64,000 bases of DNA from Octopus bimaculoides (taxonomy: Eukaryota): NCBI RefSeq assembly GCF_001194135.2, contig NC_069006.1:18975997-19039996 (forward strand), written 5' to 3'. This document shows positions 454 through 18,399 of this stretch, piece after piece. The notes under the pieces are model-generated. The model was not told where the DNA came from. It did not search any database and saw only the letters and a list, made by a program, of their open reading frames with translations. Made by a program: the position numbers and the translations under genes. Within the stretch, counting starts at the first letter, position 1. Each line of letters starts with the position of its first letter.

Positions 454-932
454 AGAAGATGAAATTGATGCTGTACCATTAAACAATTCTGAAACTAATA
501 CAGAGCCTGTGTGCATTGAAACATCCATCAGTAACTCTGATTCATTACCCAGTCTTAGTGAAACTCCAGAAACTAAAGCAGTGCCCATAATTAATGAAAA
601 TGACAAAAATGATGATGATTCAATACCCAAGCCTACAAAAGAAGGCAACAATAAAAGAAGAGCAATACCCAAATCTAATGAAGATAGCGGCAATAAAACT
701 GATGCGGTACCTCAACGTTGTAATTATCTTAGCAAGAATACTCCTGCTACGTTCATTCCTGAAGGAACTCGTAGCTATAATATGCAAGCGGCACTCCTTC
801 CCAAAAAGGATCCCAGAAAAGAATTTAACCCAAGATGCCATAAAGATGATCCATTTCACAACCAGCCAGACTCTTCTTATAATGATCATCATTCAGACGG
901 AGAAAAAATTTTAAGCATGTTTTCACAATGCT
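454..932 (+). CDS. Exon A of copy 1: acidic/disordered region with D|AVP motifs
   Basis: Acceptor ttttcattccAG (451-453) and donor CT|GTAAGG (933); lies within ORF 401..964. Confidence 0.75.
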
Positions 933-3900
933 GTAAGGCTCCATTCTTTTTTATATTTCCTTAGATAAATTCACCATCATTACTTTGCATTGCTTCCCTG
1001 TCATAATTTCTTAATTATCATTACTTATTATGTTGTCATCATTAATTTTCCATCGTTTCTTTATCATCATTACTCTCTCATTATTATTTACAAATATTCT
1101 TTGTAATCATTACTCCATCATCATTACTTCTCCATCAGTCTTTGTCAACCATTACTTTGTCATCATTGCTATTTTTACTTTGTTACCAATACTTTGTCAC
1201 TATTATTTTGTTATCCTTACTGTTTCATCCTGAATTACCTATCATTACTTCTACATCATCGCTTTGTTTTTACTTTGTCATAATCCATCATCATCTGATT
1301 TGGAAACTTACTTGGACCAACACAACTCTCCCATGCCAAGTATCCTGAACAAGCCATATGGCATGAACATCTAGCCTGGGTTTTAATCACCTTGGTCTTT
1401 CATGAGCTAAAATATCTCACTTGCACTTGCCACAGCTACAGATGAAAGCAGTGTTTCGCTAACTGAACAGGACAATACTGATTGCTGACACTTGTTGTTT
1501 GTTCATTCGCTCAGCATTTAGTGGTATTTGTCTCTGATTCAATAAATTTATTTGCCAAAATAATTCACATTCACCATGCTGCATCCCATAATTTTTATGT
1601 ACCTGGTCTCAGGTAGTTTCATGCTACTTAGCCTTTATCTGGGACTCTGACAGGTGCTACTACTCAGGCCAAAGTAGACCTGGGAACAACAGTGACTAAC
1701 AGAGGTGGTTCCACATTCCTCAAAACCCTGGAGCTCCTGAACTATTGGATGAGGTTTAACTCTTTAGCCTTTCATATCTAATAGTGATGTTTTCTTCTGT
1801 TACAGGCACAAGTAGGTTTTCCACAGGTTGGTAAATGCATTTGGTTTTCCACAGGTTGGTAAATGCATTTGGTTTTCCTAATGTTAATCTTTAAGCTGAA
1901 TTTTTGTGCAGCTCTAGCAAAATTACCTATCAGGTTCTGCATATCTTCAGCACTGTAGGCAACTAGTGCACTATCATCAGCATCTTTTGCAATAGGGCCT
2001 TCGAAGTGTGTGTCTTTGCTTTATACTGTGCAGCCTTGAACATATCAACATCATGCCACATCTAGGTGTAAGCCCCACTCCAACTTTCTTAAAGGCAACT
2101 TCCAACACTGCTGTGAGATAGAGGGAGAATAGTGCTGGAGCAAGTATGCACCCCTGTCGAACTTCATTTATCACTGCAACCTAACTTGAGGTATTACTAT
2201 TTTGTACTATAAAAGCTTGCATTCCTTCGTGTAGGGCTGATACTGTGTCAAAAGCCATTGTGACATCTACGTAAACTACATACATAGGCATGTTCCACTC
2301 AATGTATTTTTCCTGAATATTGCATAGACAGAAGATTATATCCGCAGTGCTTCTGCAATGGAAGCCACACTCAGTCTCAGGTAAGACAGATATACTCATT
2401 TAGTCTGTTTAATAGAATATGAGCCAAGATCTTCCCAGCTATTGATAGAAGAGATATACCTCAATAGTTTCCAGAGTCCACTCTACAACCTGTTTTGAAG
2501 ACAAGAATGATGCCTGTGTCTTTCCAGTCTTGTGGAACTGTTTCCGTCTTCCAGATCTAGAGCACAGTGCTATACAGGCTTTTAATAAGCTCTACACCTC
2601 CATGCTTCCAGATTTCAGTGGGTATTCAACATCTATCAGGTGCTTTACTTTCTTTCATGTGTTTGATTGCACCATTGAATTCATTGTAAACAGGTTTGTC
2701 ATCTAATGATTGGATGATTAGCTGTTGTGTCACCTTCTTGAGGGTGTCATAGTCCATGACACCGGGGATATTAAGTAGGCTAACAAAGTGATTGGCAAAT
2801 CTATCAAGAATCTCCAGTTTTTCCTGGAATACTGCTTGGCCACCAAGACCAATGAGTTTTGTTGCACCTCTACTCTGTGGCTCGCATACCATTCAAAGTC
2901 CTGAATAAAATGTTTTCATATCATTTTATCAGCATAATGCTGTAGCTCTTCAGGGTATTTGTGAACTAAACCCCCATACTTTGTGTGTGTGTATATATAT
3001 ATATATATATAAAGAGTAAAGGGTAAAGACCCCTTCAGTCATGAATGATCATGGGATTGCACCTAGAAGGTTCCCCTCTGAGGCACAAGTCCGGGTAAGT
3101 TTTTTTTGTGGAAAACCAGCAGTCATCCATGCATACCAGCCTCCCCCCTCTCCACACCACCGATGTTGCCCAAGGGAAAGGCAAAGGCCAATACAGCTTG
3201 GCACCAGTGATGTCACAACTCATTTCTACAGCTGAGTGAACTGGAGCAAAGTGAAATAAAATGCCTTGCTCAAGAACACAACACACAGCTAGGTCCAGGA
3301 ATCGAACTCAGTACCTCATGATTGTGAGCTTGATGCTCTAACCACTGAGCTACACACACACACACATGCACACAAAACGGGCTTCTTTCAGTTTTTATCT
3401 ATCAAATCTACTGAAAAGGTTTTGGTTGACCTGGGGCTATGTTAGAAGAGTCTTGACCAAAGTACCTTGCACTGGGATTGAACTTGGGACTATGTGGTTG
3501 AGAAGCTAACTTCTTAATACACAGCCATGCCTATGTATGTATTATATTCTCAAAAATTTATGCTCTTGTGCTAAGTTAGAATTTTATATATTTATTCTAG
3601 CGAATATTACTATTGGAACAAGCAATCTATCCATTGGTAACTCTAATATCACAAATGTATTCAGCTCAGAACCGAGGAAGATAAAATCCGAGCATCATAG
3701 GGAGAAATTCATCAAATATTTCAGTAAGTAAATGCAGTTTCTATTTGTTGATTTCATATTAATCTTTTTATTTGTTTCAGTTGTTAGACTGTGACCATGC
3801 TGGGGCACTGCCTTGAGGGATTTTAGTCGAACTATTCGACCCCAGCACTCATTTCCTTTTTAAACCTGGTAGTTATTCTATCAGCTCTCTTTTGTTGAAC

Positions 3901-3940
3901 TTCTAAGTTACAGGGACATAAACACACCAACACTGGTTGC

Positions 3941-3973
<33 letters not shown>

Positions 3974-6081
3974 GTCAGTTGATGGTGGGGGACAAGAGAG
4001 AGATGTATGGAATTGGGAGGAGATGATAAGTGAGCATGGCACCAGCAAGACTTACATTATTTGGAAAATGCAATGGAAAAAATACAGTGAAATTGTCATG
4101 GAGAGTTGAATGTCTAACATTTAAGATAGAGTGTGAAATCTGATGGCGATTTGACTGTTATTTCTAAACAAAAACGTAAATATCAAACATTTCAATATAA
4201 AATCTTAAGAATCATGGAAATATTTTTGCAGAGTCTAATACAGTACTGACTGAGAAACACCTCAACAAAATAGCCAAATACTTAGGGAATAAATGGAAGT
4301 CTGTTGGTAAGTATAAAATATACATTACTTTAGATGTTTGGCTTCTATCATATCTTTATGTCTTGTCTTTTACTTGTTTTAGTCATTATATTGTTGCCAT
4401 GCTGGGGCAGCACCTTGAAGAATTTTTAGTTGGATGAATCCAGTACTTTTTTTTTTTTTTTTTTTAAGCCCGGTGTTTATTCTATCAGTCACTTTTGCTG
4501 AACTGCTAAGTGATAAAGATACAAACACACCAACACTGGTTGTCAAGCAGTGGTGGAAACAAACATGCACACACACACACACGTGTGACAGGCTTCTTTC
4601 AGTTTCCATCTACCAAATCCACTCACAAGGTTTTGGTTGGGCTGGTGCTATAGTAGAAGACACTTGATCAAAGTCCCATGCAGTGGGAATGAACCTGGAA
4701 TCATGCAGTTGGGAAGCAAATTTTCTTACCACCCAGCCATCCCTACGCCTATCTAACTACAAAATAATGTTTAGTGAGTGCTAAGATACTTAATGTGATG
4801 AAGAAAAAATTTCAGTTGAAGTTGTTTTTGCTAGGAGGAGAGGAAAAGAATCTTAACCCTTTTGCTACCATACTTTTGTTGGAACTCTTCTTTTGTTGTA
4901 ATTAATGTTGAAAATAATGAATTTATGAATATAACTGTTTTGAGATTAAGCTAGTGTTTTGAATATAAATTTGCATAAAAATTTGGGTTCAAGATTTTAA
5001 TTCAAATCACTTAAAAAACAAGAAATTTGTAGCATAGAACCAAAGTCAGTATTAAAAAGTTAGTGTTAACAAAATCTAATTCTAGACGAAGGGAGACAAC
5101 TTCGAAATTGTAACGAATCAAAGTTTGAAACAATACAATGAGGAGATAAAGACATTATTAGCTAGAGGCTTAGTGAGTACAGTGGCAGGTGTGGACATAT
5201 TTTGGATACAACCTTTATGCTAAGTCTCAATCACGTCATCATGATCTTCCCTTATTTGGTAATATAGATCTTCTCACTTTACCTACCTTAATTGAATGTG
5301 TGAACAAGATGTGGACTTTGCAAGCCACGGATTACTCGTCTCAGAGATCAGTAACATTTTGACTAAGAAGTGATAAAAAGGGACTCTTTGATCCTCCCCA
5401 CATGAGACAACCACTCTAGTGTCACCCAGTAAATTCCATGCTTCCCTATTCTCAATCTTTTGTCTTTTATCTTTTACTTGTTTCAGTCATTCGATTGCAG
5501 CCATGCTGGAGCACTGCCTTCAGAAATTTTAGTCAAACAGATTGACCCCCCCCCCCCAGTACTTATTTTTCCTTTTAAGCCTGGCACTTATTCTATGATT
5601 CTCTTTTGCTGAACTGCTAAGTTACAGGGATGTAAACACACCAACACCAGTTGTCAAGTAGTTTATGTGCTTGTCTACATCACTTATAATCATTTCAGTA
5701 TCACTTATTATTATCTGGATTCTTTCTATTTTCAGTCCCCAGTTTCTGCTTATCTCCATTTCTAGATCTTCATATCTGGATATTTTTTTTTCATTATCTA
5801 TTTTTGTCCTTCGGAATCGATACATCATTTGCTATTATTATTCTTCTTGTCAATGATATAATATTTTATTTTCAGGTCGGGATTTAGAAATTAAAGACGC
5901 TATGCTGGAAAACATAGAAGCAAACTACTCAAATAATGTTGAAGAACAAAGTTTTCAAATGTTAAACAAATGGTTACAGCTTTCCAAGTCGGAGACATGT
6001 ACAACTAGCAAATTAGCTGAAGCACTCTTTGAGGCTGAATGTTATGATTCAATTCAATATTTACCATTAGAGGAGGAGTGA
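454..6081 (+). CDS. Spliced Imd/RIPK1-like death-domain adaptor, copy 1 (5'-partial); join(454..932,3601..3723,4232..4306,5876..6081)
   Basis: All three introns are GT-AG and phase 1. The join reads open for ~293 aa to TGA at 6079-6081: EDEIDAVPL...KILSMFSQC-S-NITIGTSNLSIG...KYF-K-SNTVLTEKHLNKIAKYLGNKWKSV-G-RDLEIKDAMLENIEANYSNNVEEQSFQMLNKWLQL...KLAEALFEAECYDSIQYLPLEEE*. The C-terminus fits the death-domain pattern (IA..LG..W..GR.L.I....I....EQ.FQML.KW....T...L..AL). The Imd/RIPK1 label is inferred from architecture. Confidence 0.8.
1940..2900 (-). mobile_element. Degraded RTE-type LINE reverse-transcriptase fragment in the exon A-B intron
   Basis: Frameshifted RT motifs: EVRQGCILAPALFSLYL; LPETECGF..RSTADIIF....QEK..E......YVD...AFDTV; ILDRFANHF. 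Confidence 0.8.
3014..3350 (-). mobile_element. tRNA-derived SINE
   Basis: tRNA-like A/B-box head at the 3350 end; body shared with the copies at 18230-18395 and 44960-45215. Confidence 0.7.
3601..3723 (+). CDS. Exon B of copy 1: RHIM-like core (NITIGTSN)
   Basis: Acceptor tttattctAG (3599-3600), donor CA|GTAAGT (3724), 123 nt, phase 1-1. Skipping it would create TAG at the A/C junction, so it is needed for the frame. Confidence 0.75.
4232..4306 (+). CDS. Exon C of copy 1: N-terminal part of the death domain
   Basis: tttttgcAG|AGTCTAAT...GTCTGTTG|GTAAGT, 75 nt, phase 1-1; encodes SNTVLTEKHLNKIAKYLGNKWKSV. Confidence 0.85.
4368..4750 (-). mobile_element. Major tRNA-derived SINE, shared by both duplication copies
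   Basis: Same consensus as 59535-59945; the same insertion is present, truncated, at 15640-15850. Confidence 0.8.
5876..6081 (+). CDS. Exon D (terminal) of copy 1: remainder of the death domain
   Basis: ttttattttcAG|GTCGG; 67 codons to TGA; AATAAA downstream. Confidence 0.85.
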
Positions 6082-6444: not shown

Positions 6445-7330
6445 TTGTCCATATTGGTTACTACGTTAGTTTAATATCATAACTATATTTGGAGTAGTAC
6501 GGAGTGCATTCTGTGTTAACATAATAATACTGTGATAGGTTATTCTAGATAACCATATCCGAGTAATTATTTAGGTAATACTATTCTTACACACACGTCA
6601 TATTTTTGGTGATGAGGATATTTGAACCCATGCTGGACAGATTATTGTTTGAACATGGAAGATTTACTAGCTTTGGTAATTCAATTACAGAAACAGCAGT
6701 TGTTGGAATTGCAGAAGCAACAGCAGCTGTTAGTACAACGGCTTCAGAAGAAAACAGAAAATATATCAAAAGGATGTGTTATAATACTATTCCACAGCCA
6801 TACCAACAATCCACATATACAACTTTCAAACACATTTACCAATGTACAACCATATTGATAAATAAATTCCATAAGTAAATTACAACCACTCCTAAATACG
6901 CAACTAAACAGCAACAGCTCTATTAAGTCATACAGAATTATAATCCCAACCATCTTCCATAGTGTAATATAAAAGTAAAAGCTTAATGACCACATTATTT
7001 CAATCAATCAGTATATAGACAGGATGTGTAGTTCATTCTGACATGGTCACAAACTCCATCTGAGAGTTTGCATATAATCCAGAGGAGGGTACAACTTTTC
7101 CTGCTTACTTTAGAAGGTATGAAGAAATTTTTAAAGAAGAGTGCTCTGACTAGCAAGATGAAAAATCATACCCGACTTTTGTTGAGAAAGTTGGCATCAG
7201 CCAAGCATGAGAAATATTGAAATTACATATTACCAAAGAGACCAGGTTTTGAAGAAGATGTGAATATTTTGTCAAAGATTTTCGGCGGAAAACCTCTTTA
7301 TTTAATATGCATTGGTAATGCATGAATATT
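6445..7330 (+). mobile_element. Ty3/Gypsy remnant: putative LTR end, PBS and degenerate gag
   Basis: PBS-like TGGTGATGAGGAT at 6607 (complement of the tRNA-Ser(GCT) 3' end after CpG decay). gag-like MEDLLALVIQLQKQQLLELQKQQQ and EFAYNPEEGTTFPAYFRRYEEIF, with stops. Confidence 0.7.
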
Positions 7331-8379
7331 ACAGAAAAATAAGATGTATATTTTATTATATATACTGGAATTGTTAATAGGGATAGGGAATGTAAGAGAT
7401 TTAAAATTAATGAACTAACACCAGATATGTTTAAATAATCAATTTTTGTGAAAGGTTTAATAGCAAAGAAAAATGTGGAAATTCATAACCAAATTCTGAC
7501 TAAATTAGAGCAGAATCAGAAGTATTAGTGAGTAAAAAGAGAGAAAAATGACTGACAGCAAATATACTAATTACAGGGTGGCAGCGCTAAGCAGTGATGT
7601 ATGTAAATAGAAGGTTATTAGCAGCTCAAATATGCTAGAAGCATATTCCAAACCATAAAAATGCTGTTCACTGTGTTTTGCCACAGAGAAAACTTCTTGC
7701 TGTAACAAATGGTGTAAATAAACCAGCATCAGCTCACAGTGTGACAAAACACAGCAAATGGCTTTCTTATGGGTTCAAATATGCTTGAGACATATTTGAA
7801 CTGATATAACCTTGGACTTCCACTAATATCCACTGAAACAAGGTATCAACTAAGGTAGACACATGTCTAATATTATATATTATAAATAATGTTATACATT
7901 ATAACATCATATATCAATATGTATTGCCTTTTGGGCAAGATCGAAATGTAGTGCATATGTGTGTGTGCAAGAGTTCCCTAGCTTGCATATTAAATATTCT
8001 GTCAGTTAAATCTGGTCTGTCAGCTAGTGTCTGTCCTGGATAAACTTTGTGATACTGGTCGAGCAATGAAAATTAAATTATGGAGATGTATTTGCATAGC
8101 AAGTGACTTGATCTGAGATCCTGTGCTGAAACAAAATCAATTGCAGCATGGAAGATGACTGTAAGCCATTTAAGAATGCACAAAAAACTGTTAGATTCAC
8201 TTCTACATTTAAATTTTAATTTGTGCCAAAATATTTTCGTCACTCTGAAACCATGACCGATTCACTGACAAAACTTTGTGCTGCATCTAGATATTCTTAA
8301 ATGGCTTCTATAATGCAATTGTTTTTGAAAATGTTGAAGTGAATCTAATGGTTTTTTGTTTTCCTTGAAGCTGCAATTG

Positions 8380-8428
<49 letters not shown>

Positions 8429-8774
8429 TATAATGTAAAGAAACCACAAAAAGAAAAAAAGACCCTAGTGAAAAACAGCAACCCAGGATTTCGTGGATGA
8501 GATACATAAATATATTACTAATGATCCGATAAAGCAGAGACCTAGAAGATGAAATACGACAAAGCAGTTATTAACAGAACTTTTTTATTTTTATGAATTT
8601 TCACAAATCTTTTTCAATTCTGTCTTCTGCAATATGGAGTTAATAAGATGATGCAAAAAGAAAAAAAATTTTTTTAAATCCCCAACCCCTCAATTTTTTT
8701 TCGGACAGTCCGAATCTACCATTTGTTTCTCTTTATAATTTCCAAATAATTTTTTAATATATTTTTGGAAAAAA

Positions 8775-9265
8775 GTCAATTGACAGTCTTCACACTTTTT
8801 CACATAATCCTGGACTTTATGTGAAATGCCAGTGTCTGCTGCATGTCCATCAACGATATTATTTTCTACTCTAGGCATAAGGCCTGAAATTTTGTGGGAG
8901 GGAACAGTTGATTAGATTGACTAATAGTACACAACTGGTACTTAATTCATCAACCTTGAAAGGATGAATGGCAGAGTCGATTTCGGCAGAATTTGAACTC
9001 AGAATGTAAAGACATGAAATACCGCTAAGCATTTTGCCCGGCATGCTAACGATTCTGCCAGCTCGCCATCTTCAAGAAACATCTTTTCTACTCAAGGTGC
9101 TAGTTTCAAAATGTTTTTTGCATAATCATATCAATTCCATTATGCAGAGGACAGAATCGAAAAAGTTATGAGAGGTTTTAGTAGGTCAATTGACAGTCTT
9201 GACACTTTCACACATAATCTTGGACATAATGTGAAATGCCAGTGACATGCTGCATGTCCATCAAC
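8775..9265 (-). mobile_element. Two ~80-bp copies of an integrase Zn-binding-like fragment flanking a SINE piece
   Basis: 8775-8854 and 9185-9265 are diverged direct repeats reading GHAA..GISH.VQDYV.KC.DCQ on the - strand. Confidence 0.3.
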
Positions 9266-10169
9266 AAGATTAGCAGACAGCCAGCCATACAGTGGTACGA
9301 CATATAGTCTAAGTAGAAGAAAACCTTTTTAAGAGGAAAAATGAAGTTGGAAGAGTGGTGAAAAAGTTTTAGGTACTTGTGGTCGCTGTAACCGATGGTG
9401 TGCCAGTTCTTCTATGTGTGTATAAAGATATAATTAAAACAATATGTATACACCCACATAAATACACACACACATATACAACAAAGCCTAATGGTGTGAG
9501 TTTTCTAAAACTCCTTTAGGCACAAATGGTTTTCACAATATGCAAACCCAATTGTATGAATGGATCATAAGATTGAACTGCAAAGTAAAAATTTGAAATG
9601 GCGTTGACAATAATTTTTGTTTCCATGGATGCGCATAAACATGTACTCCAGCCTGGAAAACGCTATAACTGGTTAATGTGTATGACTGGGCATGCATAAC
9701 AGGACATACAGAGAAACTCCTTTTCTTTTAAATATATTACTAATGATCCAATACGACAGGCTTCTTTCAGTTTCTGTCTACCAAATCTGCTCACAAGGCT
9801 TTGGTTGGCCAAAGGCTATGGTAGAAGACACTTACCCAAGGTGCCATGCAGTGGGACTGTACCTGAAAAGTATGTGGTTGGCAAGCAAGCTTCTTACCAC
9901 ACAGTCACTCCAATCATTCACATAACCTATTTACATAATGTGAATGATAATATTTTGAAAACAAAAATGTTTAATATTTAATTTCATATGTAGGAGTAGC
10001 TGTGTGGTAAGAAACTCGCTTCCCAACCACATGGTTTTGGGTTCAGTCTCACTGCATGGCACCTTGGGCAAGTGTCTTCTACTATAGCCTCAGGCCGACC
10101 AAGTCTTTTTGAGTGCATTTGGTAGATGGAAACTGAAAAAAGCCCGTCGTATATGTGTGAAATTTATAC

Positions 10170-10543
10170 CCCTTTATTTGTTTCAGTCATTTGACTGTGG
10201 CCATGCTGGAGCACCGCCTTTAGTTGAGCAAATCGACCCCAGAACTTATTCTTTGTAAGCCTAGTACTTATTCTATTGGTCTGTTTTGCTGAACCGCTAA
10301 GTTACGGAGATGTAAACACCAGTATCGTTTGTCAAGTGATCTTAGGGGGACAAACACAGACACACACATATATATAAGACGGGCTTCTTTCAGTTTCCAT
10401 CTACCAAATCCACTCACAAGGCTTTGGTAGGCCCGAGGCTATAGTAAAAGACTCTTGCCCAAGGTGCCATGCAGTGGGACTGAATCCGGAACCATGTGGT
10501 TCGTAAGCTAGCTACTTACCACACAGCCACTCCTACGCCTATA
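10170..10543 (-). mobile_element. Near full-length major SINE
   Basis: Matches the family consensus, with an internal CA/TA tract; preceded by a + strand SINE head at 9990-10160. Confidence 0.8.
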
Positions 10544-10618
10544 AAAAACAAAAGATGAAGACAGATGTATGAACAACAAGTAAGTGTATTAGTTTCACGC
10601 TTAGGAAAATGAAGAAGT

Positions 10619-10654
10619 CTTTTACGTTTCAAGCCTATGCTCTTCATCAGAAAG
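10619..10654 (-). ncRNA. Minimal type I hammerhead ribozyme motif (Penelope pLTR-like)
   Basis: The - strand reads CTTT CTGATGA AGAGC ATAG GCTT GAAAC GTA AAAG: intact core, stem I, stem II and a GUA cleavage triplet. Confidence 0.6.
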
Positions 10655-11707
10655 GAATAAAAGAAAATAAACAAAGAGAGAACTTGTAGAGTTTAGCAGT
10701 CCAACATGGTGAATATATGTATGTATTTGTGTGTCTGTGTCCCCACCACCATCGCTTGTCAACAGATGTTGGTGTGTTTACGTCCCTGTAAGTTAGCGGT
10801 TCGGCCCAAAAGACTGATAAAATAAGTACTAGGCTTACAAAGAATATATCTTGGGGTTGATTTGTTCGACCAAAGGCAATGCTCCAGCATGGCTGCAGTC
10901 AAAAGTATAACAGAATAATTGTGCATGCATGCATGGGAGAGAGAGAGAGAGAGAAACTGATAAACTAAATACAATTTTGTAATTGAAATACCAGTGACTT
11001 TAAAATTATGTCCCTTGCGTCTGTGACTGCCACTACCACCCACTCCCACTTCATCTTGCTGTTTCACTTTCTTTTCCTCACCTTCGTGGGCAGCCACATA
11101 TCGTGTTTCTTGTGCTCTAACTTCTTGTTGAACATCATTCATAGAAAATAGTAGCGACCACCATAAAGAAATACAAAGGTTAGTTAACTTTTCAAATATG
11201 TTTTGGTTTTAAATAACCTCATTCTTTTTGTTAGTTTTTATTTTATGCTTGTTAGATCTCTATCAAATCCTGAAACTTTCTTTAACTTAGAATAAACTAT
11301 CTTAATACTGTGCTGCCAACCAGGAAGTACCTGCACTACATAAAACCACTTATAACTTTGTGTTTGTTTGGAATTTTCAGAAAATGTTTGTGAATCTGTG
11401 TTCTATACACATGAATTCATATGTGTTCTATACACAGGAATTCATATGATTATGAAAACTAAAATATTTGGTGTGCGTTTAAGGCAATATAACTTTATTT
11501 TAGCACAGCTCACAAATACCTCATGCCTTCCTTGCACTGATATTTATTGATATTTTTCAACGTTTTTCTCCCCATAAACTCATTTAATGGAATGATGATG
11601 CACTCAAGGGCAGTCAATTGCTGGGATTTATTAATAAGGAAAAATTTGAAAATTAGGGGTAGAGTTTAAAAAATTAAGAAAAGAAATGTTTTTTTCATAA
11701 TCATATG

Positions 11708-12085
11708 TGGAGGCATGGCTGTGTGGTGAGAAGCCTACTTCCCAATCACATGGTTCTGGGTTCAGTCCCATTTCATGGCATCTCAGCCAAGTGTTTTCTA
11801 CTATATTCGCAGGCCAACCAAAAACTCGAGAGTGAATTTGGTAGATGAAAACTGAAAGAAGCCCACATATATATGGCTATTTATATATGTATATAGCCAT
11901 AAGTGTGTGTCTTTGTGTCTATGTTTGTCCACACATCATCACTTGACAACGGGTGTTGGTGTGATTATGTCCCTGTAACTTTGCAGTCCAGCAAAAGTGA
12001 CTGATAGAATAAATGCCAGGTTTAAAAATAAGCCCTGGAATTGATTTGTTTGATTAAAACCCCTTCAAGGTGATGCTCTAGTATG
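11708..12085 (+). mobile_element. Full-length major SINE
   Basis: Head tggaggcatggctgtgtggt followed by the family body. Confidence 0.75.
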
Positions 12086-12427
12086 GGCTCACAACTTTTT
12101 TAGTACAATTTTTTGTTGCATGGGATCAAAACTATGAAATTCTTCACACATTCTCCTATCATTGAATCTAAGATAAAATAATATATTTTGTTTTTAAAAT
12201 ATAAATGTTATTTAGATCTAAATTTGACTGGTGGCGTTAGTTACTCTCCTATAACGTTGCTACAAATTTTGATGTAAACCTTTTTCTACTGGATCAAATC
12301 TCAAATTTTTTTTATGCCAAAATGTAGCTAGAGACCAGCCCTCTTCCAAAATGTTATCAGTTTTCAATTTGATTAAGAACTGAATTAACGACAAGTTCTG
12401 AAATATACTGCGTATGAGTAAATTGAA

Positions 12428-12465
<38 letters not shown>

Positions 12466-13137
12466 GAAGGTTTGAAAATGCACTTATTTTTTAAAAATAT
12501 TTATTTACTTAACCGGTTTCACTTTTTTAGAAAAAGATTATCAAAAGTCTTTTGAGAATAATAAAAAATGTTAAAAAACAGTCTGAGTATTAAAATGCAT
12601 ATATACATTCTTTGATGATAAAATATATTTAAAGTATAAAGCTTTGTATGAACTTTGTAGTGTTACATACTGATTGTCACACATTCTCTGATATATACTG
12701 CGTATGAGTATATATGTATGTATGTATGTATGTATATGTCAGAAAAAATATATTCAAGTAGAACAATTCAATCTTTTTGAGGAGTCCAAAAGGAGAGAAA
12801 AATAATATGAAAATGAAGAAAGTTTGCCAATGTGAGGACTAAAAGTATTTTGGATTACAAGACAGTGATTGAAACCTTTGGCATTATGCTGTGCTTGAGA
12901 AGAAGACCCATCAAGCTAAGTGAAACTATAGTCTCAATATATACGACAGGCTTCTTTAAGTTTCCATCTATCAAATCCACTCAGTTTGGTTTGCCTCAGG
13001 ATTTATTAGAAGACACTTGGTCCATGATGTCACTTTGCGAAGCAAACTTCTTAACACACAGCAATGCCTATGTATGTATTATATTCTCAAAAATGTATGA
13101 TCTTGATGCTATGTTAGAAATTTTATATTCATTTCAG

Positions 13138-13239
13138 CAAATATTAGTATTGGAACGAATGTTGTAGTCATGGGTGACTCTAGCATTGCAGAAAAGCCAA
13201 AATGTGAGAGTGATAACGATCAATTCAGCTGCTATCTCA
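13138..13239 (+). CDS. Exon B' of copy 2 (RHIM-like ISIG)
   Basis: catttcAG|CAAAT...CTCA|GTAAGT, 102 nt, phase 1-1. Confidence 0.7.
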
Positions 13240-13758
13240 GTAAGTAAAAGTAGTTTCTATTTGTTTACTCTTTTTACTCTTTTACTTGTTTCAGTCATTT
13301 GACTGCAGCCATGCTGGAGCACCGCCTTTAGTCGAACAAATTGACCCCAGGACTTATTTTTTGTAAGCCTAGTACTTATTCTATTGGTCTCTTTTGCCGA
13401 ACTGCAAAGTTATGGGGACGTAAACACACCAGCATCGGTTGTCAAGCGATGTTGGGGGGACAAACACAGACACACAAACACACACACATATATATATATA
13501 TATATACATATATACGACGGGCTTCTTTCAGTTTCCGTCTACCAAATCCACTCACAAGGCTTTGGTCGGCCCGAGGCTATAGGAGAAAACACTTGCCCAA
13601 GGTGCCATGCATGTGGTTGGTAAGCAAGCTACTTACCACACAGCCACTCCAACCTTTTACTTGTATCAGTCATTAGAAGGAGGCCATGCATATATATATG
13701 TATGCACATATATATATATGTGTCTGTACATATATATATGTATGCACATATGTATATG

Positions 13759-13808
<50 letters not shown>

Positions 13809-16594
13809 TCTATAAATATATACATTGGGTTATCCCTGTAAACAATGCATTTTTTTATACTTCTTTTATTTTCCAAAATTAAGATAAACAAAGTTCTTTT
13901 CTAATCTAAAATATACTCTCCTTCGTTTTCTACAATGCTCTTCTGTCTATCTGGTAGACTTGCAAGGCCCCTCTTCCAAAATTCTCTTGTCCGTGACGAA
14001 AAATACTCCTCCAGTACTGTTCTGACCTCGTCTACAGAATTCATATTTTTTCCATCCAAATGATTTTGAAGACTGCGGAATAAATGATAATCCGATGGGA
14101 CAATGTCCAGCGAATATGGTGGGTGGGGCAAAAAAGGTTCATTCATGAGATGTGACAGCAAAGAAGAGCACACATTCACTTGCAGCACGTGATTAGACTC
14201 GGAAAGTTTGTGAGCAACCTATTGACCCAATTTGCTTACTTTTCCGATGGCACACAGGTGTCAATGAATGGGTGAATGACCAAATCCAAGCTTTTCTGCT
14301 AGTTCCTCAACACTTACAATGGGATTTTGTTCCACTAGGGTTTGCAGGATGTCCTAATTGAGCGCTACAAATCTTCCAGGATGAGGCTCGTCTTCTAGTC
14401 TAATTTCCGTCTTGGAATTTCCGGAACCACTGTTGACACTGGCTTACAGTTATTGTCGAATCCCAATATACTACATTAATATTCCTCACACTTTCTGTTG
14501 CGTTGTTGCCTTTATTGAAATCATAAAGCAAAATAGCTTTGAAAAAATAACTGTTAAAATCAAACAGCACTCTTTAAAATTTGCAGTAAGAACAATCACA
14601 AGGTGAACTTACTACCTGCTTTTATAGTAAGTGAATACAGGTAGTTTATCCTGTTCCCCTGTGACTTTTAGTTCATGCAATTGATAAAAACTGCATTATT
14701 TATGAGATGACCCTTATAAATGAGTAACAGTAGAGAACTACAGGTGTCACTTCATGATGACCATTTCAAACAACTCGTTTAGTTAATTAACAAAAACATT
14801 ACATCATTGTAAAGAAACCGTTTTCATCAGATAAATTCATGAACTTCAAAATATAGCACATTCAATATGATTTGACATAGTTTACAATCTATACAACAAA
14901 AATATTTCTAGAAATAGCAGCAGAAACAATATAAATGTTTTTGCTCTGTGGATTGTAAACTATGTTAAATCATTTTGAATGTCCTTTATTTTGAAGTTCA
15001 TGAATTCGTCTGAGGAAAACTGTTTTTTTTCACAATGATGTAATGTCTTCATTAATCAATTAAAGGGTTCATTAGAAACAGTCATAATTGATTGACACCT
15101 GTACCTCTGCAGTTACTCGTTTACATTTTATTCACCTGTCTCGAAATCTGCTCTTCATAAATATTATGGACCATATATTTAATATAATGTACATGTCAAG
15201 AGTGGATTTCTTCATTCAGCTTGGTTTAATAGTCTACATACACTGCAAGAATATCATTTGGCTGGTATTTATGTAGCAAGTTTGATGTTTACATAATATT
15301 GTTGTGTGTGTGTGTGTGTGTGTAAGTTGCCAACTAAGGATTACAAGGATTTAAAAGATTTGGGGATGACAAAACACCCCATGTGACTAACACAGGGTTA
15401 AGATAGAGTGTGAAATTTGATGGCGATTTAATTGTTATTTCTAAACAAAAAAGTAAATATGAAACATTTCAATATAAAATCTTAAGAATCATGGAAATAT
15501 TTTTGCAGAGTCTAATACAGTACTGACTGAGAAACACCTCACCAAAATAGCCAAATACTTAGCGAAAAAATGGAAGTCTGTTGGTAAGTATAAAATATCC
15601 ATTACTTCAGATGTTTTGCTTCTATCATATCTTTGTTTTATCTTTGACTTGTTTCAGTCATTAGACTGTGGCCATGCTGGTGCACCACCTTGAAGAATTT
15701 TTAGTCAGATGAATTCAGTACTTTTTTTTTTTTTTTTTTGAAGCCAGGTGTTTATTCTATCAGTCACTTTTGCTGAACTGCTAAGTTACAGAGATGCGAA
15801 CACACCAACCCTGGTTGTCAAGCAGTGGTGGAAACAAACACACACATACACACGTGCACATAGGTTTGAAATAAGGTGGAAAAAGTAGTACTTGAATACC
15901 AAAGGTAGAAAAAAATGTTCTTTTATTGAAGCTGGAAAAACCTTCACAAGCTGTTACTCAGATTTTTATGTAACCTATCATCAGACAGTTGTGATACTGA
16001 ATTATCAAATATTTCTGATGAAACTCTGAGTAAGAGTTTGTGGAGGATTTTTTCCAGCTTCAAAAAATTAGTTCATCATTTCTTTGGTGACATCCCTCCA
16101 GGATCAGGTCATGAATTTTCATGATGCTTTCATTCGTTTGGGAGGTCGACGGTCGCCTTGCATGAGGTTGGTCTTCAAATGACTAGTGACCCTTCCTACA
16201 GCATGGAAACCACTCATAAACTTGTGCTTCGCTTATGGCAGCATCCTTGTAAGCTGCTTGAAGTTTGACAACTGTTTCAGCGACCATTTTTCCCTAGTAT
16301 AAATTTTTTCATTATGTATCCCTCGAAATCGATACATTATTTACTATTATTATTGTTGTTGTCAATGATATAATATTTTTATTTTCAGGTCGAAATTTAG
16401 GGATTGAAAATGCTGACATAGATATAATACAAAGTGACAACGTACTTAATACTGAAGAACAGAGTTTTCAAATGTTGAACAAATGGTTGAAGATGTCCAA
16501 GCCAGAGAAAGGTACAACTGGCAATTTAGCTAAAGCTCTCATTGATGCTGATTGTCATGGTGCGATTCCATATTTACCATTAGATGAAGAGTGA
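13138..16594 (+). CDS. Duplicated RHIM-like + death-domain module, copy 2; join(13138..13239,15509..15583,16389..16594)
   Basis: Paralogous to exons B, C and D, with GT-AG phase-1 introns. Open frame: xNISIGTNVVVMGDSSIAEKPKCESDNDQFSCYL-K-SNTVLTEKHLTKIAKYLAKKWKSV-G-RNLGIENADIDIIQSDNVLNTEEQSFQMLNKWLKMSKPEKGTTGNLAKALIDADCHGAIPYLPLDEE*. No upstream exon A equivalent was found. Confidence 0.7.
13268..13650 (-). mobile_element. Full-length young major SINE in the copy 2 B'-C' intron
   Basis: Near-consensus sequence with a (TACTCTTT)n tail on the + strand. Confidence 0.85.
13823..14716 (-). mobile_element. Internally deleted mariner element
   Basis: ORF 13901-14188 encodes the transposase C-terminus (HPPYSLDIVPSDYHLFRSL). 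Degenerate TIRs: gggttatccctgtaaacaatgc and the reverse complement gggtcatctcataaataatgc. Confidence 0.8.
14779..15063. repeat. Foldback element (~130-bp imperfect inverted arms, ~25-bp spacer)
   Basis: acattacatcattgt...ttcatgaacttcaaaata...catagtttacaatc is mirrored at 14933-15063. Confidence 0.75.
15509..15583 (+). CDS. Exon C' of copy 2 (death domain N-terminal part)
   Basis: 72/75 nt identical to exon C, with the same splice sites. Confidence 0.8.
15928..16061. repeat. Nested palindromic element with a collapsed hammerhead-like core
   Basis: GAAGCTGGAAAAA/TTTTTCCAGCTTC, TTACTCAGA/TCTGAGTAA and CATCAGA/TCTGATG nested pairs; CTGATGAAACTC at 16015. Confidence 0.55.
16389..16594 (+). CDS. 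Exon D' of copy 2 (death domain C-terminal part)
   Basis: attttcAG|GTCGA; 67 codons to TGA (16592-16594); no indels relative to exon D. Confidence 0.8.
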
Positions 16595-17879: not shown

Positions 17880-18228
17880 AAAAGAGAGTTGTGTCCCTTT
17901 GACCTCTTCCACATCTGGTGCACGTTTTTCTTTAAGGATATTTTTCATATAAAGGACAAAAAACAAGTTACAGGGAGTAGCATCGGGTGAATGGGGGTGG
18001 TGAAGGTAAGTGGAGTCATGCCATTTTTGGTCAAAAACTGTCTTACACTCCAGACGGTGCGCGCAGGCGCATTGTCGTGATAAAACCACCACTCTCCACT
18101 TCGCCACAGGTCATGCATTTTCGTCTTTGCCGCGTCTTGCAAATGCTTCAGAACTGCCAAGTGAAATGTCTGGTTAACAGTTTGGCCTGGAGGAATAAAT
18201 TCTGTGTGGGTAATTCCTTTTGTGAAGG
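17880..18228 (-). mobile_element. Mariner transposase fragment
   Basis: WWFYHDNAPART..SVRQFLTKN and HHPHSPDATPCNLFF, the catalytic-region motifs, frameshifted. Confidence 0.8.
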
Positions 18229-18399
18229 CGCATAGCTCAGTGGTTAGAGCGTCGAACTTACGATCGTGGGTTGTGAGTTTGAATCCCGAACCGGGCTGCG
18301 TGTTGAGTTCTTGAGCAAGACACTTTATTTCACGTTGCTCCAGTTTCACTCCGCTGTAGAAATGAGTTGCAATGTCACTGGTGCCAAGCTGTATAGACC

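What the first reader, a model, noticed from the sequence alone, without database searches (positions are those of the whole stretch)
454..6081. Imd/RIPK1-type adaptor (IBM + RHIM-like + death domain) hidden across four exons
Seen: four GT-AG, phase-compatible exons join into ~293 open codons, ordered as acidic disordered region with D|AVP sites, then FSQCSNITIGTSN, then a C-terminal death domain. The ORF track misses most of this. Known: Drosophila Imd has a caspase-exposed IAP-binding motif, a cryptic RHIM and a C-terminal death domain; RIPK1 has a caspase-8 site, a RHIM and a death domain. Inference: a cephalopod-type Imd/RIPK-like immune or cell-death adaptor. A kinase domain upstream of the window cannot be excluded.
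Basis: partly seen in the sequence, partly recalled or inferred. Interest (0 to 1): 0.85.

Follow-up and report, generated by a model that had tools for sequence, protein, structure and literature searches.

The report
Octopus kinase-less Imd/RIPK1-like death-domain adaptor
The four exons are a real Octopus bimaculoides gene, already in RefSeq under the misleading name "RIPK1", and it encodes a short kinase-less protein laid out like the insect immune adaptor Imd, a type that a 2023 paper said had not been found in molluscs.

Summary
Exons 454-932, 3601-3723, 4232-4306 and 5876-6081 have GT-AG borders and join in phase into 293 codons plus a stop. The product matches RefSeq XP_052833014.1 (300 aa) at 100% identity.

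The only upstream coding sequence is one of several alternative first exons of 7-9 codons. No kinase exon lies in the window, in the 12 kb upstream, or in the 62-kb O. sinensis locus.

The C-terminus is a confident death domain, closest in sequence and fold to the RIPK1 death domain. A beetle IMD gives the same result.

A profile of the octopus protein retrieves insect IMDs carrying the coleopteran LTTD/A signature. The alignment puts octopus DEID|AVPL on the insect caspase-cleavage and IAP-binding site.

Octopus carries six [AS][VIL]P motifs in the first 95 residues of the RefSeq protein, against 0.33 expected. Four follow an Asp.

The RHIM-like stretch sits where RIPK1 and IMD have their RHIM, but its statistical support is modest.

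Death-domain phylogeny cannot separate Imd orthology from independent kinase loss. dN/dS against O. sinensis is about 1.

A truncated tandem paralogue lies downstream.

Cleavage, IAP binding and amyloid formation are inferred, not shown.

The parts
454..932 (+). Exon 1 within the window (the second coding exon of the gene). It encodes the disordered, net-acidic N-terminal region: residues 1-159 of the 293-residue translation, plus the first base of the split Ser160 codon.
   Evidence: AG acceptor at 452-453 and GTAAG donor at 933. Identical to the RefSeq protein. No secondary structure and pLDDT about 50 in the model. Residues 1-165 of the RefSeq X2 protein hold 28 D+E against 19 K+R.
458..481 (+). 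DEID|AVPL: candidate caspase cleavage site (after Asp) followed by a candidate IAP-binding motif (neo-N-terminus AVPL).
   Evidence: MAFFT places it on the insect IMD LTTD|A site. That site is defined in PMC6626034. O. sinensis has DETD|AVPL. Cleavage itself is inferred.
533..715 (+). The other five of the six [AS][VIL]P motifs: SD|SLPS, K-AVPI, DDD|SIPK, RR-AIPK and KTD|AVPQ. The last four begin successive 14-residue units (578-715).
   Evidence: Six motifs against 0.33 expected, with 0 of 20,000 shuffles reaching six; the 14-residue register is shown in the same output. Coordinates. All six are conserved in O. sinensis. No DNA-level tandem repeat was detected.
3601..3723 (+). Exon 2: RHIM-like segment SNITIGTSNLSIGNSNITNV (cores NITIGTSN at 3603-3626 and LSIGNSNITNV at 3627-3659), then the linker to the death domain.
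   Evidence: Splice sites. An HMM alignment puts RIPK1 GIQIGNSNVMHI on LSIGNSNITNV. PSSM score 8.2, reached by 50 of 5000 shuffles; the O. sinensis orthologue scores 14.6, reached by 3 of 5000. Pfam RHIM finds nothing.
4232..4306 (+). Exon 3: start of the death domain (first long helix).
   Evidence: Pfam Death covers residues 209-285. Model pLDDT is 96-98 here. This exon is 96% identical to the paralogue's exon 3.
5876..6081 (+). Exon 4: remainder of the death domain, C-terminal YLPLEEE, and stop codon TGA at 6079-6081.
13138..16594 (+). Tandem paralogue (gene 2). Exons 13138-13239, 15509-15583 and 16389-16594 have the same intron positions as gene 1. RefSeq annotates it as a 116-aa death-domain protein. 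A possible first exon (MEDLLALVIQ...) starts at 6655. No N-terminal motif exon is detectable.
   Evidence: tblastn and translation. P0008 is the 116-aa RefSeq model. The gene pair is conserved in O. sinensis. Its RHIM-like segment is not significant.

Best explanation
This is the Octopus bimaculoides member of the RIPK1/Imd death-domain adaptor family. It is a 300-residue cytosolic protein with no kinase domain. From N- to C-terminus it has a disordered region with caspase-type Asp sites directly followed by A/S-V/I-P tripeptides, then a RHIM-like segment, then a RIPK1-type death domain.

Proposed mechanism, by analogy with Drosophila Imd:
1. The death domain recruits the protein to FADD or receptor death-domain complexes.
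2. The caspase-8-type protease bound there cuts after Asp (DEID|AVPL, and possibly SD|SLPS, DDD|SIPK and KTD|AVPQ).
3. The new N-terminus acts as an IAP-binding motif for a BIR-domain E3 ligase.
4. The ligase ubiquitinates the adaptor and so recruits TAK1/IKK-type kinases to activate NF-kB.
5. The RHIM-like segment helps the adaptor oligomerise.

Shown here: the gene structure, the absence of a kinase, the RIPK1-type death domain, the disorder of the N-terminus, the non-random motif array, and its alignment with the insect IMD site.

Inferred: cleavage, IAP binding, amyloid-like assembly and the NF-kB output.
For: - Gene model: four in-phase GT-AG exons that equal the RefSeq protein.
- No kinase: short first exons, no kinase motifs, and no tblastn hits in about 140 kb from two species.
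- Death domain: Pfam 3.2e-10. RIPK1 DD is the best solved relative by sequence, with a roughly 10^7-fold E-value gap to TRADD, FADD and ankyrin. It is also first by fold. Beetle IMD behaves the same way.
- Family: exhaustive HMMER with the octopus profile retrieves short kinase-less proteins with D|A/S-x-P, a RHIM and a DD. These include beetle and leafhopper proteins. The beetle proteins carry the published coleopteran IMD signature LTTD/A. The search also retrieves kinase+RHIM+DD proteins from vertebrates and the annelid Owenia. Owenia has the closest DD outside cephalopods, at 48% identity.
- Alignment: the octopus D|AVP column aligns with the IMD cleavage/IBM column, and its Pro is invariant across 13 sequences.
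- Motif enrichment: 0 of 20,000 shuffles.
- A transcript from an unidentified species (P0016) shows the same plan with three D|A-x-P sites.
- RHIM-like motif: correct position, aligned to the RIPK1 RHIM, empirical p about 0.01 in O. bimaculoides and 6e-4 in O. sinensis.
- Partners: FADD, caspase-8/10 and IAPs, including a Diap2-like protein, are reported in a squid (PMC9389742).
Against: - No experimental or RNA-seq data were examined.
- Pfam RHIM does not hit. The central Gln of canonical RHIMs is replaced by Thr or Ser. The PSSM score is modest, and it was trained on only 10 sequences found through the same death-domain search.
- P4 of the first site is Asp (DEID), which is more effector-caspase-like than the L/V-x-x-D of insect IMDs.
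- Two of the six motifs follow Lys or Arg, not Asp.
- The DD tree does not place the octopus clade inside arthropod IMD (itself only 54% support) or inside RIPK1, so orthology is unresolved.
- dN/dS against O. sinensis is 0.99 (CI 0.61-1.87), and exons are slightly less conserved than flanking introns (90.5% against 92.8%). This species pair therefore shows no purifying selection.
- The Argonauta orthologue is N-terminally partial and shows no D|AVP in the part available.
Confidence: 0.65

Rival explanations
1. It is a kinase-less RIPK1 derivative that acts only through its death domain (and perhaps its RHIM-like segment) as a scaffold, decoy or dominant-negative regulator of death-receptor/FADD complexes. 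On this reading the A/S-V/I-P motifs have no IAP-binding role. It lost the kinase independently of arthropod Imd.
For: The closest death domain outside cephalopods belongs to a kinase-bearing annelid protein (Owenia, 48% identity). Deep tree nodes are unresolved. The same death-domain type has been shuffled into many octopus proteins, including MIB-like RING E3 ligases and an adhesion GPCR, so domain loss and gain is common in this lineage. The downstream paralogue already lacks the N-terminal exon.
Against: The motif array is highly non-random. Its first copy aligns with the functional site of insect IMD. The same D|A-x-P, RHIM and DD order recurs in many kinase-less relatives.
Confidence: 0.2
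2. It is a caspase-activated IAP antagonist, functionally like Smac or Reaper. Cleavage at several Asp sites releases fragments with AVPL, SLPS, SIPK and AVPQ N-termini. These fragments displace caspases from IAPs and amplify apoptosis rather than NF-kB signalling.
For: There are several IBM-like motifs, one of them (AVPI) identical to what I recall as the mature Smac N-terminus (own knowledge, not checked here), and four directly follow Asp. Drosophila IMD itself 'can promote apoptosis', per the title of Georgel 2001 as cited in PMC6626034.
Against: AVPI follows Lys, not Asp. A death domain and a RHIM-like segment are not features of known IAP antagonists. The overall architecture matches IMD.
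Confidence: 0.1
3. The locus is drifting neutrally. It would be a recently duplicated death-domain gene under relaxed constraint, with motifs that are remnants of no current function.
For: dN/dS is 0.99, and exons are no better conserved than introns between O. bimaculoides and O. sinensis. Between the two paralogues, exons 2 and 4 are less conserved than their flanking introns.
Against: The reading frame is intact, with only in-frame indels, in O. bimaculoides and O. sinensis, and colinear full-length protein models exist in O. vulgaris. The architecture is retained in the far more distant Argonauta and in P0016. The death domain scores well above the Pfam threshold and folds confidently. N-terminal dN/dS is 0.6, with all six motifs conserved. 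Fast evolution is common in immune genes (general knowledge).
Confidence: 0.05

Closest known systems
Arthropod IMD (immune deficiency adaptor; Drosophila Imd, Tenebrio TmIMD)
   Same: Both are short kinase-less proteins of 200-300 aa. Both have an N-terminal Asp|Ala/Ser-x-Pro site: 27LEKD/A31 in Drosophila and LTTD/A in beetles. A RHIM-like motif lies between that site and a C-terminal RIPK1-type death domain. The octopus profile retrieves insect IMDs, and the motif columns align.
   Different: Octopus has six A/S-V/I-P motifs, four after Asp, partly in a 14-residue register, where insects have one site. P4 is Asp (DEID) rather than Leu or Val. The RHIM core is I-T-I-G / L-S-I-G rather than V-Q/H-I-G. 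Orthology is not resolved by the DD tree. No function has been tested.
Vertebrate RIPK1
   Same: It is the best solved relative of the death domain, at 8.6e-12 by sequence and 33% identity, rmsd 1.6-1.7 A by fold. The order of RHIM-like segment then death domain and their spacing match, and the RIPK1 RHIM aligns to LSIGNSNITNV. RefSeq names the octopus gene RIPK1.
   Different: The octopus protein has no kinase domain and no Pfam-detectable RHIM. RIPK1 has no neo-N-terminal IBM as far as I know (own knowledge). The RefSeq name is therefore misleading for function, since no kinase-dependent necroptosis role is possible.
Spiralian RIPK1-like kinase+RHIM-like+DD proteins (Owenia fusiformis CAH1778590.1; P0135, source unknown)
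   Same: Owenia has the closest death domain outside cephalopods (48% identity). The RHIM-like sequences are very similar: NISNCNNVMVGSSNVMNVT and MQGCQNVIIGNSNTINV against FSQCSNITIGTSNLSIGNSNITNV.
   Different: Those proteins keep an N-terminal protein kinase domain (Pfam hit for Owenia P0031; kinase motifs in the P0135 sequence) and lack the D|A-x-P array.
Nemertean Imd (Lineus ruber; Orus-Alcalde et al. 2023, PMC9835746)
   Same: It is a spiralian death-domain protein assigned to Imd by death-domain phylogeny. That paper states that the Imd adaptor had not been found in molluscs or brachiopods.
   Different: The paper detected no RHIM motifs in nemertean data and does not report an IBM.
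IBM-bearing IAP antagonists (Smac/DIABLO, Reaper/Hid/Grim)
   Same: They share A-V-P-type tetrapeptides that bind type II BIR grooves when N-terminal (PMC8917759). AVPI is identical to what I recall as the Smac N-terminus (own knowledge, not checked here).
   Different: Those proteins expose the motif by presequence or Met removal. They have no death domain and no RHIM.

Membership tests
Death domain superfamily (Pfam PF00531) | Sequence match above the curated threshold and a six-helix death fold | tested here: met
   Pfam Death scores 40.4 bits against a cut-off of 22.6, E 3.2e-10. The AlphaFold model has helices at pLDDT 94-98. Foldseek top hits are all death domains, with TM 0.76-0.83 normalised to the target.
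RIPK1 (receptor-interacting Ser/Thr kinase 1) | N-terminal protein kinase domain | tested here: not met
   The protein is 300/302 aa and Pfam finds only Death. First exons encode 7-9 residues. No kinase motifs or tblastn hits were found in the window, the 12 kb upstream, or the 62-kb O. sinensis locus.
RIPK1 (receptor-interacting Ser/Thr kinase 1) | RIPK1-type C-terminal death domain | tested here: met
   RIPK1 DD is the best PDB match at 8.6e-12, with the next family at 2e-4. It is also first by fold.
RIPK1 (receptor-interacting Ser/Thr kinase 1) | Canonical RHIM (I/V-Q-I/V-G core; Pfam PF12721) | tested here: inconclusive
   There is no Pfam RHIM hit at E<=10. The same model also misses two of three insect IMDs and the annelid RIPK1-like protein. 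The cores here are ITIG and LSIG. My own PSSM gives p about 0.01. An HMM aligns the segment to the RIPK1 RHIM.
IMD (immune deficiency adaptor) | Short kinase-less protein with a C-terminal RIP-like death domain | tested here: met
   A beetle IMD shows the same PDB profile. The family description is in PMC6626034.
IMD (immune deficiency adaptor) | N-terminal caspase site with conserved Asp|Ala, followed by an IAP-binding motif | tested here: met
   The sequence pattern DEID|AVPL aligns with the insect LTTD|A column. D and A are the residues the literature reports as conserved. The enrichment is non-random. This tests the sequence only.
IMD (immune deficiency adaptor) | Actual cleavage by a caspase-8/Dredd-type protease and BIR2/3 binding of the neo-N-terminus | not testable with these tools
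   This needs biochemistry. The partners (FADD, caspase-8/10, IAPs) are reported in a squid (PMC9389742).
IMD (immune deficiency adaptor) | Cryptic RHIM between the IBM and the death domain that supports amyloid-like assembly | tested here: inconclusive
   A motif of the right pattern lies at the right position, about 25-45 residues before the death domain, with modest significance. Amyloid formation is not testable here.
IMD (immune deficiency adaptor) | Orthology with arthropod IMD by phylogeny | tested here: inconclusive
   In an NJ tree of 83 death-domain columns with 300 bootstraps, the octopus clade has 92% support, vertebrate RIPK1 93% and arthropod IMD 54%. All deeper nodes are at or below 42%.

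The most novel reading that the evidence does not exclude
Cephalopods keep a true Imd-type adaptor, so the IBM + RHIM + death-domain module predates the split between ecdysozoans and spiralians and is not an arthropod invention. In octopus the single Imd cleavage site and IBM has been multiplied into a periodic array of up to four caspase-unmaskable IBMs. Stepwise cleavage could then grade or amplify IAP recruitment, or tip the outcome between NF-kB signalling and IAP antagonism.
Probability: 0.3. Interest if true: 0.65.

Novelty: new member of a known kind. Interest (0 to 1): 0.5.

Why it matters
A 2023 comparative study stated that the Imd adaptor had not been found in molluscs or brachiopods, and presented a nemertean gene as the first spiralian imd (PMC9835746). 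Cephalopod papers meanwhile list 'RIPK1' as a stress or necroptosis kinase on the strength of automatic annotation (PMC9389742, PMC6341066, PMC8917759).

Every octopus protein named RIPK1 that was retrieved here is kinase-less. The one in this window has the Imd layout.

If this holds, the missing adaptor of a mollusc Imd-like/TNFR-like NF-kB pathway has a concrete candidate. Necroptosis-kinase readings of octopus 'RIPK1' expression would then need revising. The multi-IBM array would also give a testable variant of caspase-licensed IAP recruitment.

It does not open a new category of system.

Tried and rejected
- Pfam RHIM (PF12721) found nothing in the octopus protein. I treat this as uninformative, because it passes threshold only for a vertebrate RIPK1 and misses most invertebrate family members.
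- A word-indexed search with the 13-sequence alignment at E<=1e-5 returned only four proteins, and no new named relatives. The threshold was too strict for a 5.8-billion-sequence database.
- A word-indexed search with the Owenia protein was swamped by generic kinases. It showed no mollusc kinase+DD protein, but this is not evidence of absence.
- The first AlphaFold run, on a 3-sequence alignment, was unusable (mean pLDDT 42). It was replaced by a 78-sequence alignment.
- Tandem Repeats Finder saw no DNA-level repeat under the 14-residue protein periodicity.
- The death-domain NJ tree did not resolve deep relationships. No FADD, TRADD, MyD88 or ankyrin sequences were added to it, because I would have had to type them from memory. 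Their distance was judged from the PDB searches instead.
- The test for positive selection in the death domain (2 synonymous against 22 non-synonymous changes) is not significant by my rough binomial estimate, so I make no such claim.
- The source species of the P0016 transcript (SRR27666076) could not be identified.
- Sun et al. 2025 (Dev Comp Immunol 165:105339), on the origin of RIPK1/3 'in Mollusca', is not held in the library. I know it only through a review's one-sentence summary.
- Rejected as explanations: an upstream kinase, ankyrin/UNC5/MyD88-type death-domain affinity, and a secreted or glycosylated reading of the N-x-S/T sequons in the RHIM-like stretch. No signal peptide or transmembrane segment is evident in the sequence, judged by inspection only.
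Full report
WHERE AND WHAT. The window is Octopus bimaculoides chromosome CM046626.1 (assembly GCA_001194135.2). Window position 1 corresponds to L001 position 12185. The sequence is AT-rich (about 35% G+C), rich in repeats, and contains 12 assembly gaps.

OBSERVATION. The four proposed exons are 454-932, 3601-3723, 4232-4306 and 5876-6081. Each is preceded by a polypyrimidine tract and AG, and each internal exon is followed by GTAAG. They join in one phase to give 293 sense codons and a TGA stop, while the other two frames are full of stops. [quoted passage not shown] It differs from isoform X1 (XP_014771875.1, 302 aa; UniProt A0A0L8HJL9 'Death domain-containing protein') only in the first few residues. 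The gene is not hidden, because it is an existing annotation.

UPSTREAM OF THE WINDOW. Alternative first coding exons encode MLISTFS (2184 bp upstream of the window) and MDGSSGLHR (1854 bp upstream). A third, MFRAEPFDGEKSCIGV, lies about 11.6 kb upstream and matches the N-terminus of the O. sinensis model.

The 12 kb upstream contains no kinase signature motifs. tblastn with the kinase domains of an annelid, an unassigned invertebrate and a vertebrate RIPK1-type protein finds nothing better than E about 1. This holds in the window, in L001, and in the 62-kb O. sinensis locus, which includes that gene's 29-kb first intron.

DEATH DOMAIN.
- Pfam Death matches residues 209-285 at E 3.2e-10, above the curated cut-off.
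- Against all PDB sequences, the four best matches are RIPK1 death domains (8.6e-12 to 6.3e-11). TRADD (2e-4), FADD (3e-4), ankyrin (4e-4) and RAIDD (1.6e-2) follow.
- A first structure model from three sequences was poor.
- A second model from a 78-sequence alignment gives pLDDT 94-98 over most of residues 201-300. It shows no secondary structure and pLDDT about 50 for residues 1-190.
- Foldseek against the PDB ranks the human RIPK1 death-domain filament and crystal structures first, with target-normalised TM 0.81-0.83, rmsd 1.6-1.7 A and 33% identity. RAIDD, FADD and ankyrin-G come next.
- A beetle IMD queried the same way also finds RIPK1 first (2.8e-11), then ankyrin (3e-6). The octopus domain is therefore as RIPK1-like as a true IMD domain.

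THE FAMILY. An exhaustive HMMER search of 1.84 billion representative proteins, using a profile of three octopus sequences, gave 514 hits at E<=1e-3. Most match only the death domain. Hits whose match extends further N-terminally fall into two architectures.

(a) Kinase + RHIM + DD. These are vertebrate RIPK1 (for example lungfish), the annelid Owenia fusiformis CAH1778590.1, and P0135 of unknown source.

(b) Short kinase-less proteins with an N-terminal D|A/S-x-P, a RHIM, and a C-terminal DD. Examples:
- Henosepilachna: LTTD|AFPS and GVQIG.
- Scarab beetles: LTTD|ARPQ and GVHIG.
- A leafhopper: LVLD|SVPD.
- Several transcripts from unidentified organisms.

The published signature of coleopteran IMD is exactly 'LTTDA'. 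Drosophila has 27LEKD/A31. Cleavage there by Dredd exposes an IAP-binding motif that binds DIAP2 BIR2/3 (PMC6626034; PMC9950452). The octopus profile therefore retrieves real insect IMDs. A MAFFT alignment of 13 such proteins places octopus EID|AVPL in the same column as those sites, and the Pro is invariant. Seven of the 15 non-cephalopod kinase-less relatives examined have D[AS]xP, always as the N-terminal-most copy, against 0.02-0.14 expected per protein.

THE N-TERMINAL MOTIF ARRAY. The octopus protein has not one but six [AS][VIL]P motifs in the first 95 residues of RefSeq isoform X2: EID|AVPL, SD|SLPS, TK-AVPI, DDD|SIPK, RR-AIPK and KTD|AVPQ. Four follow Asp.
- Six motifs are observed against 0.33 expected.
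- Four D[AS][VIL]P are observed against 0.03 expected.
- Three AVP are observed against 0.017 expected.
- In each case 0 of 20,000 composition-preserving shuffles reached the observed count.

The last four motifs start consecutive 14-residue units: AVPIINENDKNDDD / SIPKPTKEGNNKRR / AIPKSNEDSGNKTD / AVPQ.... There is no detectable DNA-level tandem repeat. All six motifs are conserved in O. sinensis. An intronless 1.1-kb transcript contig from an unidentified species (P0016) encodes a 299-aa relative with three D|A-x-P sites (KID|AMPV, KTD|ANPI, KPD|AMPI), a RHIM-like NVQFGGHNTMHI, and a death domain ending ELPLDE. The multi-site version is therefore not confined to one genus.

THE RHIM-LIKE SEGMENT. 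FSQC|SNITIGTSNLSIGNSNITNVF spans the exon 1/2 junction (920-3662). Pfam RHIM does not detect it. That model passes threshold only for a vertebrate RIPK1 (23.9 bits). It is sub-threshold for one beetle IMD (15.7 bits), and silent for two other insect IMDs and for the annelid kinase protein.

The octopus profile HMM aligns lungfish RIPK1 GSGIQIGNSNVMHI to octopus ...NLSIGNSNITNV, and Owenia NVMVGSSNVMNV to the same stretch.

I built a position matrix from ten non-cephalopod RHIMs. Its best scores, always at this same location, were:
- O. bimaculoides: 8.2, reached by 50 of 5000 shuffles.
- O. sinensis: 14.6, reached by 3 of 5000.
- P0016: 14.5, reached by 2 of 5000.
- Argonauta: 7.1, reached by 126 of 5000.

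The paralogue lineage is not significant. I conclude there is a RHIM-like motif in the expected place, with divergent cores (I-T-I-G and L-S-I-G) and moderate support. It is not a demonstrated RHIM.

PHYLOGENY. I built a neighbour-joining tree from 83 death-domain columns of 38 selected proteins, with 300 bootstraps. Supported clades are:
- Octopus gene 1 plus gene 2: 92%.
- Vertebrate RIPK1: 93%.
- An octopus-specific group in which this domain type is attached to MIB-like RING E3 ligases and an adhesion GPCR: 85%.
- Arthropod IMD: only 54%.

All deeper nodes are at or below 42%. The closest domain outside cephalopods is that of the kinase-bearing Owenia protein, at 48% identity. The data therefore cannot say whether the octopus gene is an orthologue of arthropod Imd or a spiralian RIPK1 relative that lost its kinase independently. 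Either way it belongs to the RIPK1/IMD group and not to the ankyrin, UNC5 or MyD88 groups.

EVOLUTIONARY RATE. The O. sinensis orthologue lies in a syntenic locus, with the same downstream paralogue. Exons are 90.5% identical between the two species and the 150-bp flanking intron segments 92.8%. Nei-Gojobori dN/dS values are:
- Whole gene: 0.99 (bootstrap 0.61-1.87).
- N-terminal region: 0.6.
- RHIM region: 1.4.
- Death domain: 2.8, from only 2 synonymous and 22 non-synonymous changes, which I do not regard as significant.

Only in-frame indels separate the two species. The gene is evolving fast, so this species pair gives no evidence of purifying selection. Long-term retention of the architecture in Argonauta and P0016 argues that it is functional.

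TANDEM PARALOGUE. Downstream lies a copy with identical intron positions: exons 13138-13239, 15509-15583 and 16389-16594. RefSeq annotates it as a 116-aa 'RIPK1' (P0008). A possible first exon, MEDLLALVIQ..., starts at 6655 and matches the start of the O. vulgaris orthologue. No homologue of the motif-bearing exon is detectable between 6.1 and 13.1 kb, and that interval has no assembly gap. Exons 2 and 4 are less similar between the paralogues (71% and 79%) than their flanking introns (80-91%).

MECHANISM (INFERRED). The proposed sequence of events follows Drosophila Imd (PMC6626034, PMC9950452).
1. The death domain brings the adaptor to FADD or receptor death-domain assemblies.
2. The associated caspase-8-type protease cuts after Asp.
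3. The new A/S-V/I-P N-terminus docks into a type II BIR groove of an IAP E3 ligase.
4. K63-type ubiquitin chains recruit TAK1/TAB and IKK, leading to NF-kB activation.
5. The RHIM-like segment promotes higher-order assembly.

FADD, caspase-8/10 and several IAPs, including a Diap2-like one, are reported from the squid Euprymna (PMC9389742). Octopus IAPs are catalogued in PMC8917759. None of these steps was tested here. The rival readings are a pure death-domain scaffold or decoy, a caspase-activated IAP antagonist, and neutral drift. They are listed with their evidence in the rival explanations.

COMPARISON WITH WHAT IS KNOWN. The protein is not a RIPK1 in the defining sense, because it has no kinase, even though databases and several papers call it one. 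It meets the sequence-level features of IMD: short, kinase-less, RIP-type death domain, and D|A plus IBM. The cRHIM and orthology tests are inconclusive, and the biochemical features are untestable here.

The literature is split. One paper says Imd is unknown in molluscs (PMC9835746). I found no paper in the searchable library that describes the kinase-less, IBM-bearing architecture in a cephalopod.

VERDICT. This is a real and already annotated gene. It is a new member of a known kind, with a lineage-specific multi-IBM array as the most interesting detail. Interest is moderate, at 0.5.

Noticed in passing
window 6655-16594 (+): A tandem paralogue of the finding's gene has the same intron positions but no detectable N-terminal motif exon in O. 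bimaculoides. RefSeq models it as a 116-aa death-domain-only 'RIPK1'. The O. vulgaris and O. sinensis orthologues (292 and 205 aa) keep more N-terminal sequence. The two-gene arrangement is conserved in O. sinensis (L003).
   Followed up: partly
window 3601-6081 vs 13138-16594; window vs L003: Coding exons are no better conserved than adjacent introns, and are often less so. This holds between the two paralogues (exon 2 at 71% against 82-84%; exon 4 at 79% against 80-91%). It also holds between O. bimaculoides and O. sinensis (90.5% against 92.8%; dN/dS 0.99). The cause could be diversifying selection or relaxed constraint, and this was not resolved.
   Followed up: partly
proteins P0013-P0024 and others (elsewhere in Octopus genomes): The same RIPK1-type death domain is attached in octopus to many other architectures. 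These include MIB1/MIB2-like ankyrin+RING E3 ligases, an adhesion GPCR ('GPR126-like', 1283 aa), and several 130-aa death-domain-only proteins. Together they form an 85%-supported octopus-specific clade.
   Followed up: partly
window 25646-27592 (-): An uninterrupted 648-codon ORF in 35% G+C DNA, Q/N/P/S-rich after a roughly 170-residue N-terminal region. It has no Pfam hit (E<=0.01) and no PDB sequence hit (E<=1). It is too long to be chance, so it is probably a large coding exon or an intronless gene of unknown family.
   Followed up: partly
window 17945-19903: Transposon debris in the one G+C-rich stretch (47%). It comprises a mariner-type transposase fragment on the minus strand (Pfam Transposase_1, sub-threshold), a reverse-transcriptase fragment (RVT_1, sub-threshold), and a 341-aa ORF on the plus strand.
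   Followed up: partly
window, 18 sites incl. 9, 3767, 4369, 5473, 13281, 15644: A SINE-like element with the core TTTACTTGTTTCAGTCATT...GCCATGCTGG occurs 18 times on both strands. Copies lie in introns 2, 3 and 4 of the finding's gene and at matching positions in the paralogue.
   Followed up: no
L003 42572-42691 and 43669-43788: In the O. sinensis assembly the RHIM-like exon and about 400 bp around it are present twice, 1.1 kb apart, with identical translations. This is either a very recent exon duplication or an assembly artefact.
   Followed up: no
protein P0005 (O. vulgaris CAI9741230.1, 453 aa): This gene model continues past the death domain into a second copy of the N-terminal region, which then goes out of frame. 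It looks like a mis-model or a locus with a partial duplication.
   Followed up: no
L001 612, 10001, 10331 (upstream of the window): Three alternative first coding exons (MFRAEPFDGEKSCIGV, MLISTFS and MDGSSGLHR) all splice to window position 454. They give isoforms that differ only ahead of the DEID|AVPL site.
   Followed up: partly
window 24472-56120: Twelve runs of N (10-785 bp) are flanked by (TA/CA)n-type microsatellites. About 4.7 kb of the window is unresolved.
   Followed up: no
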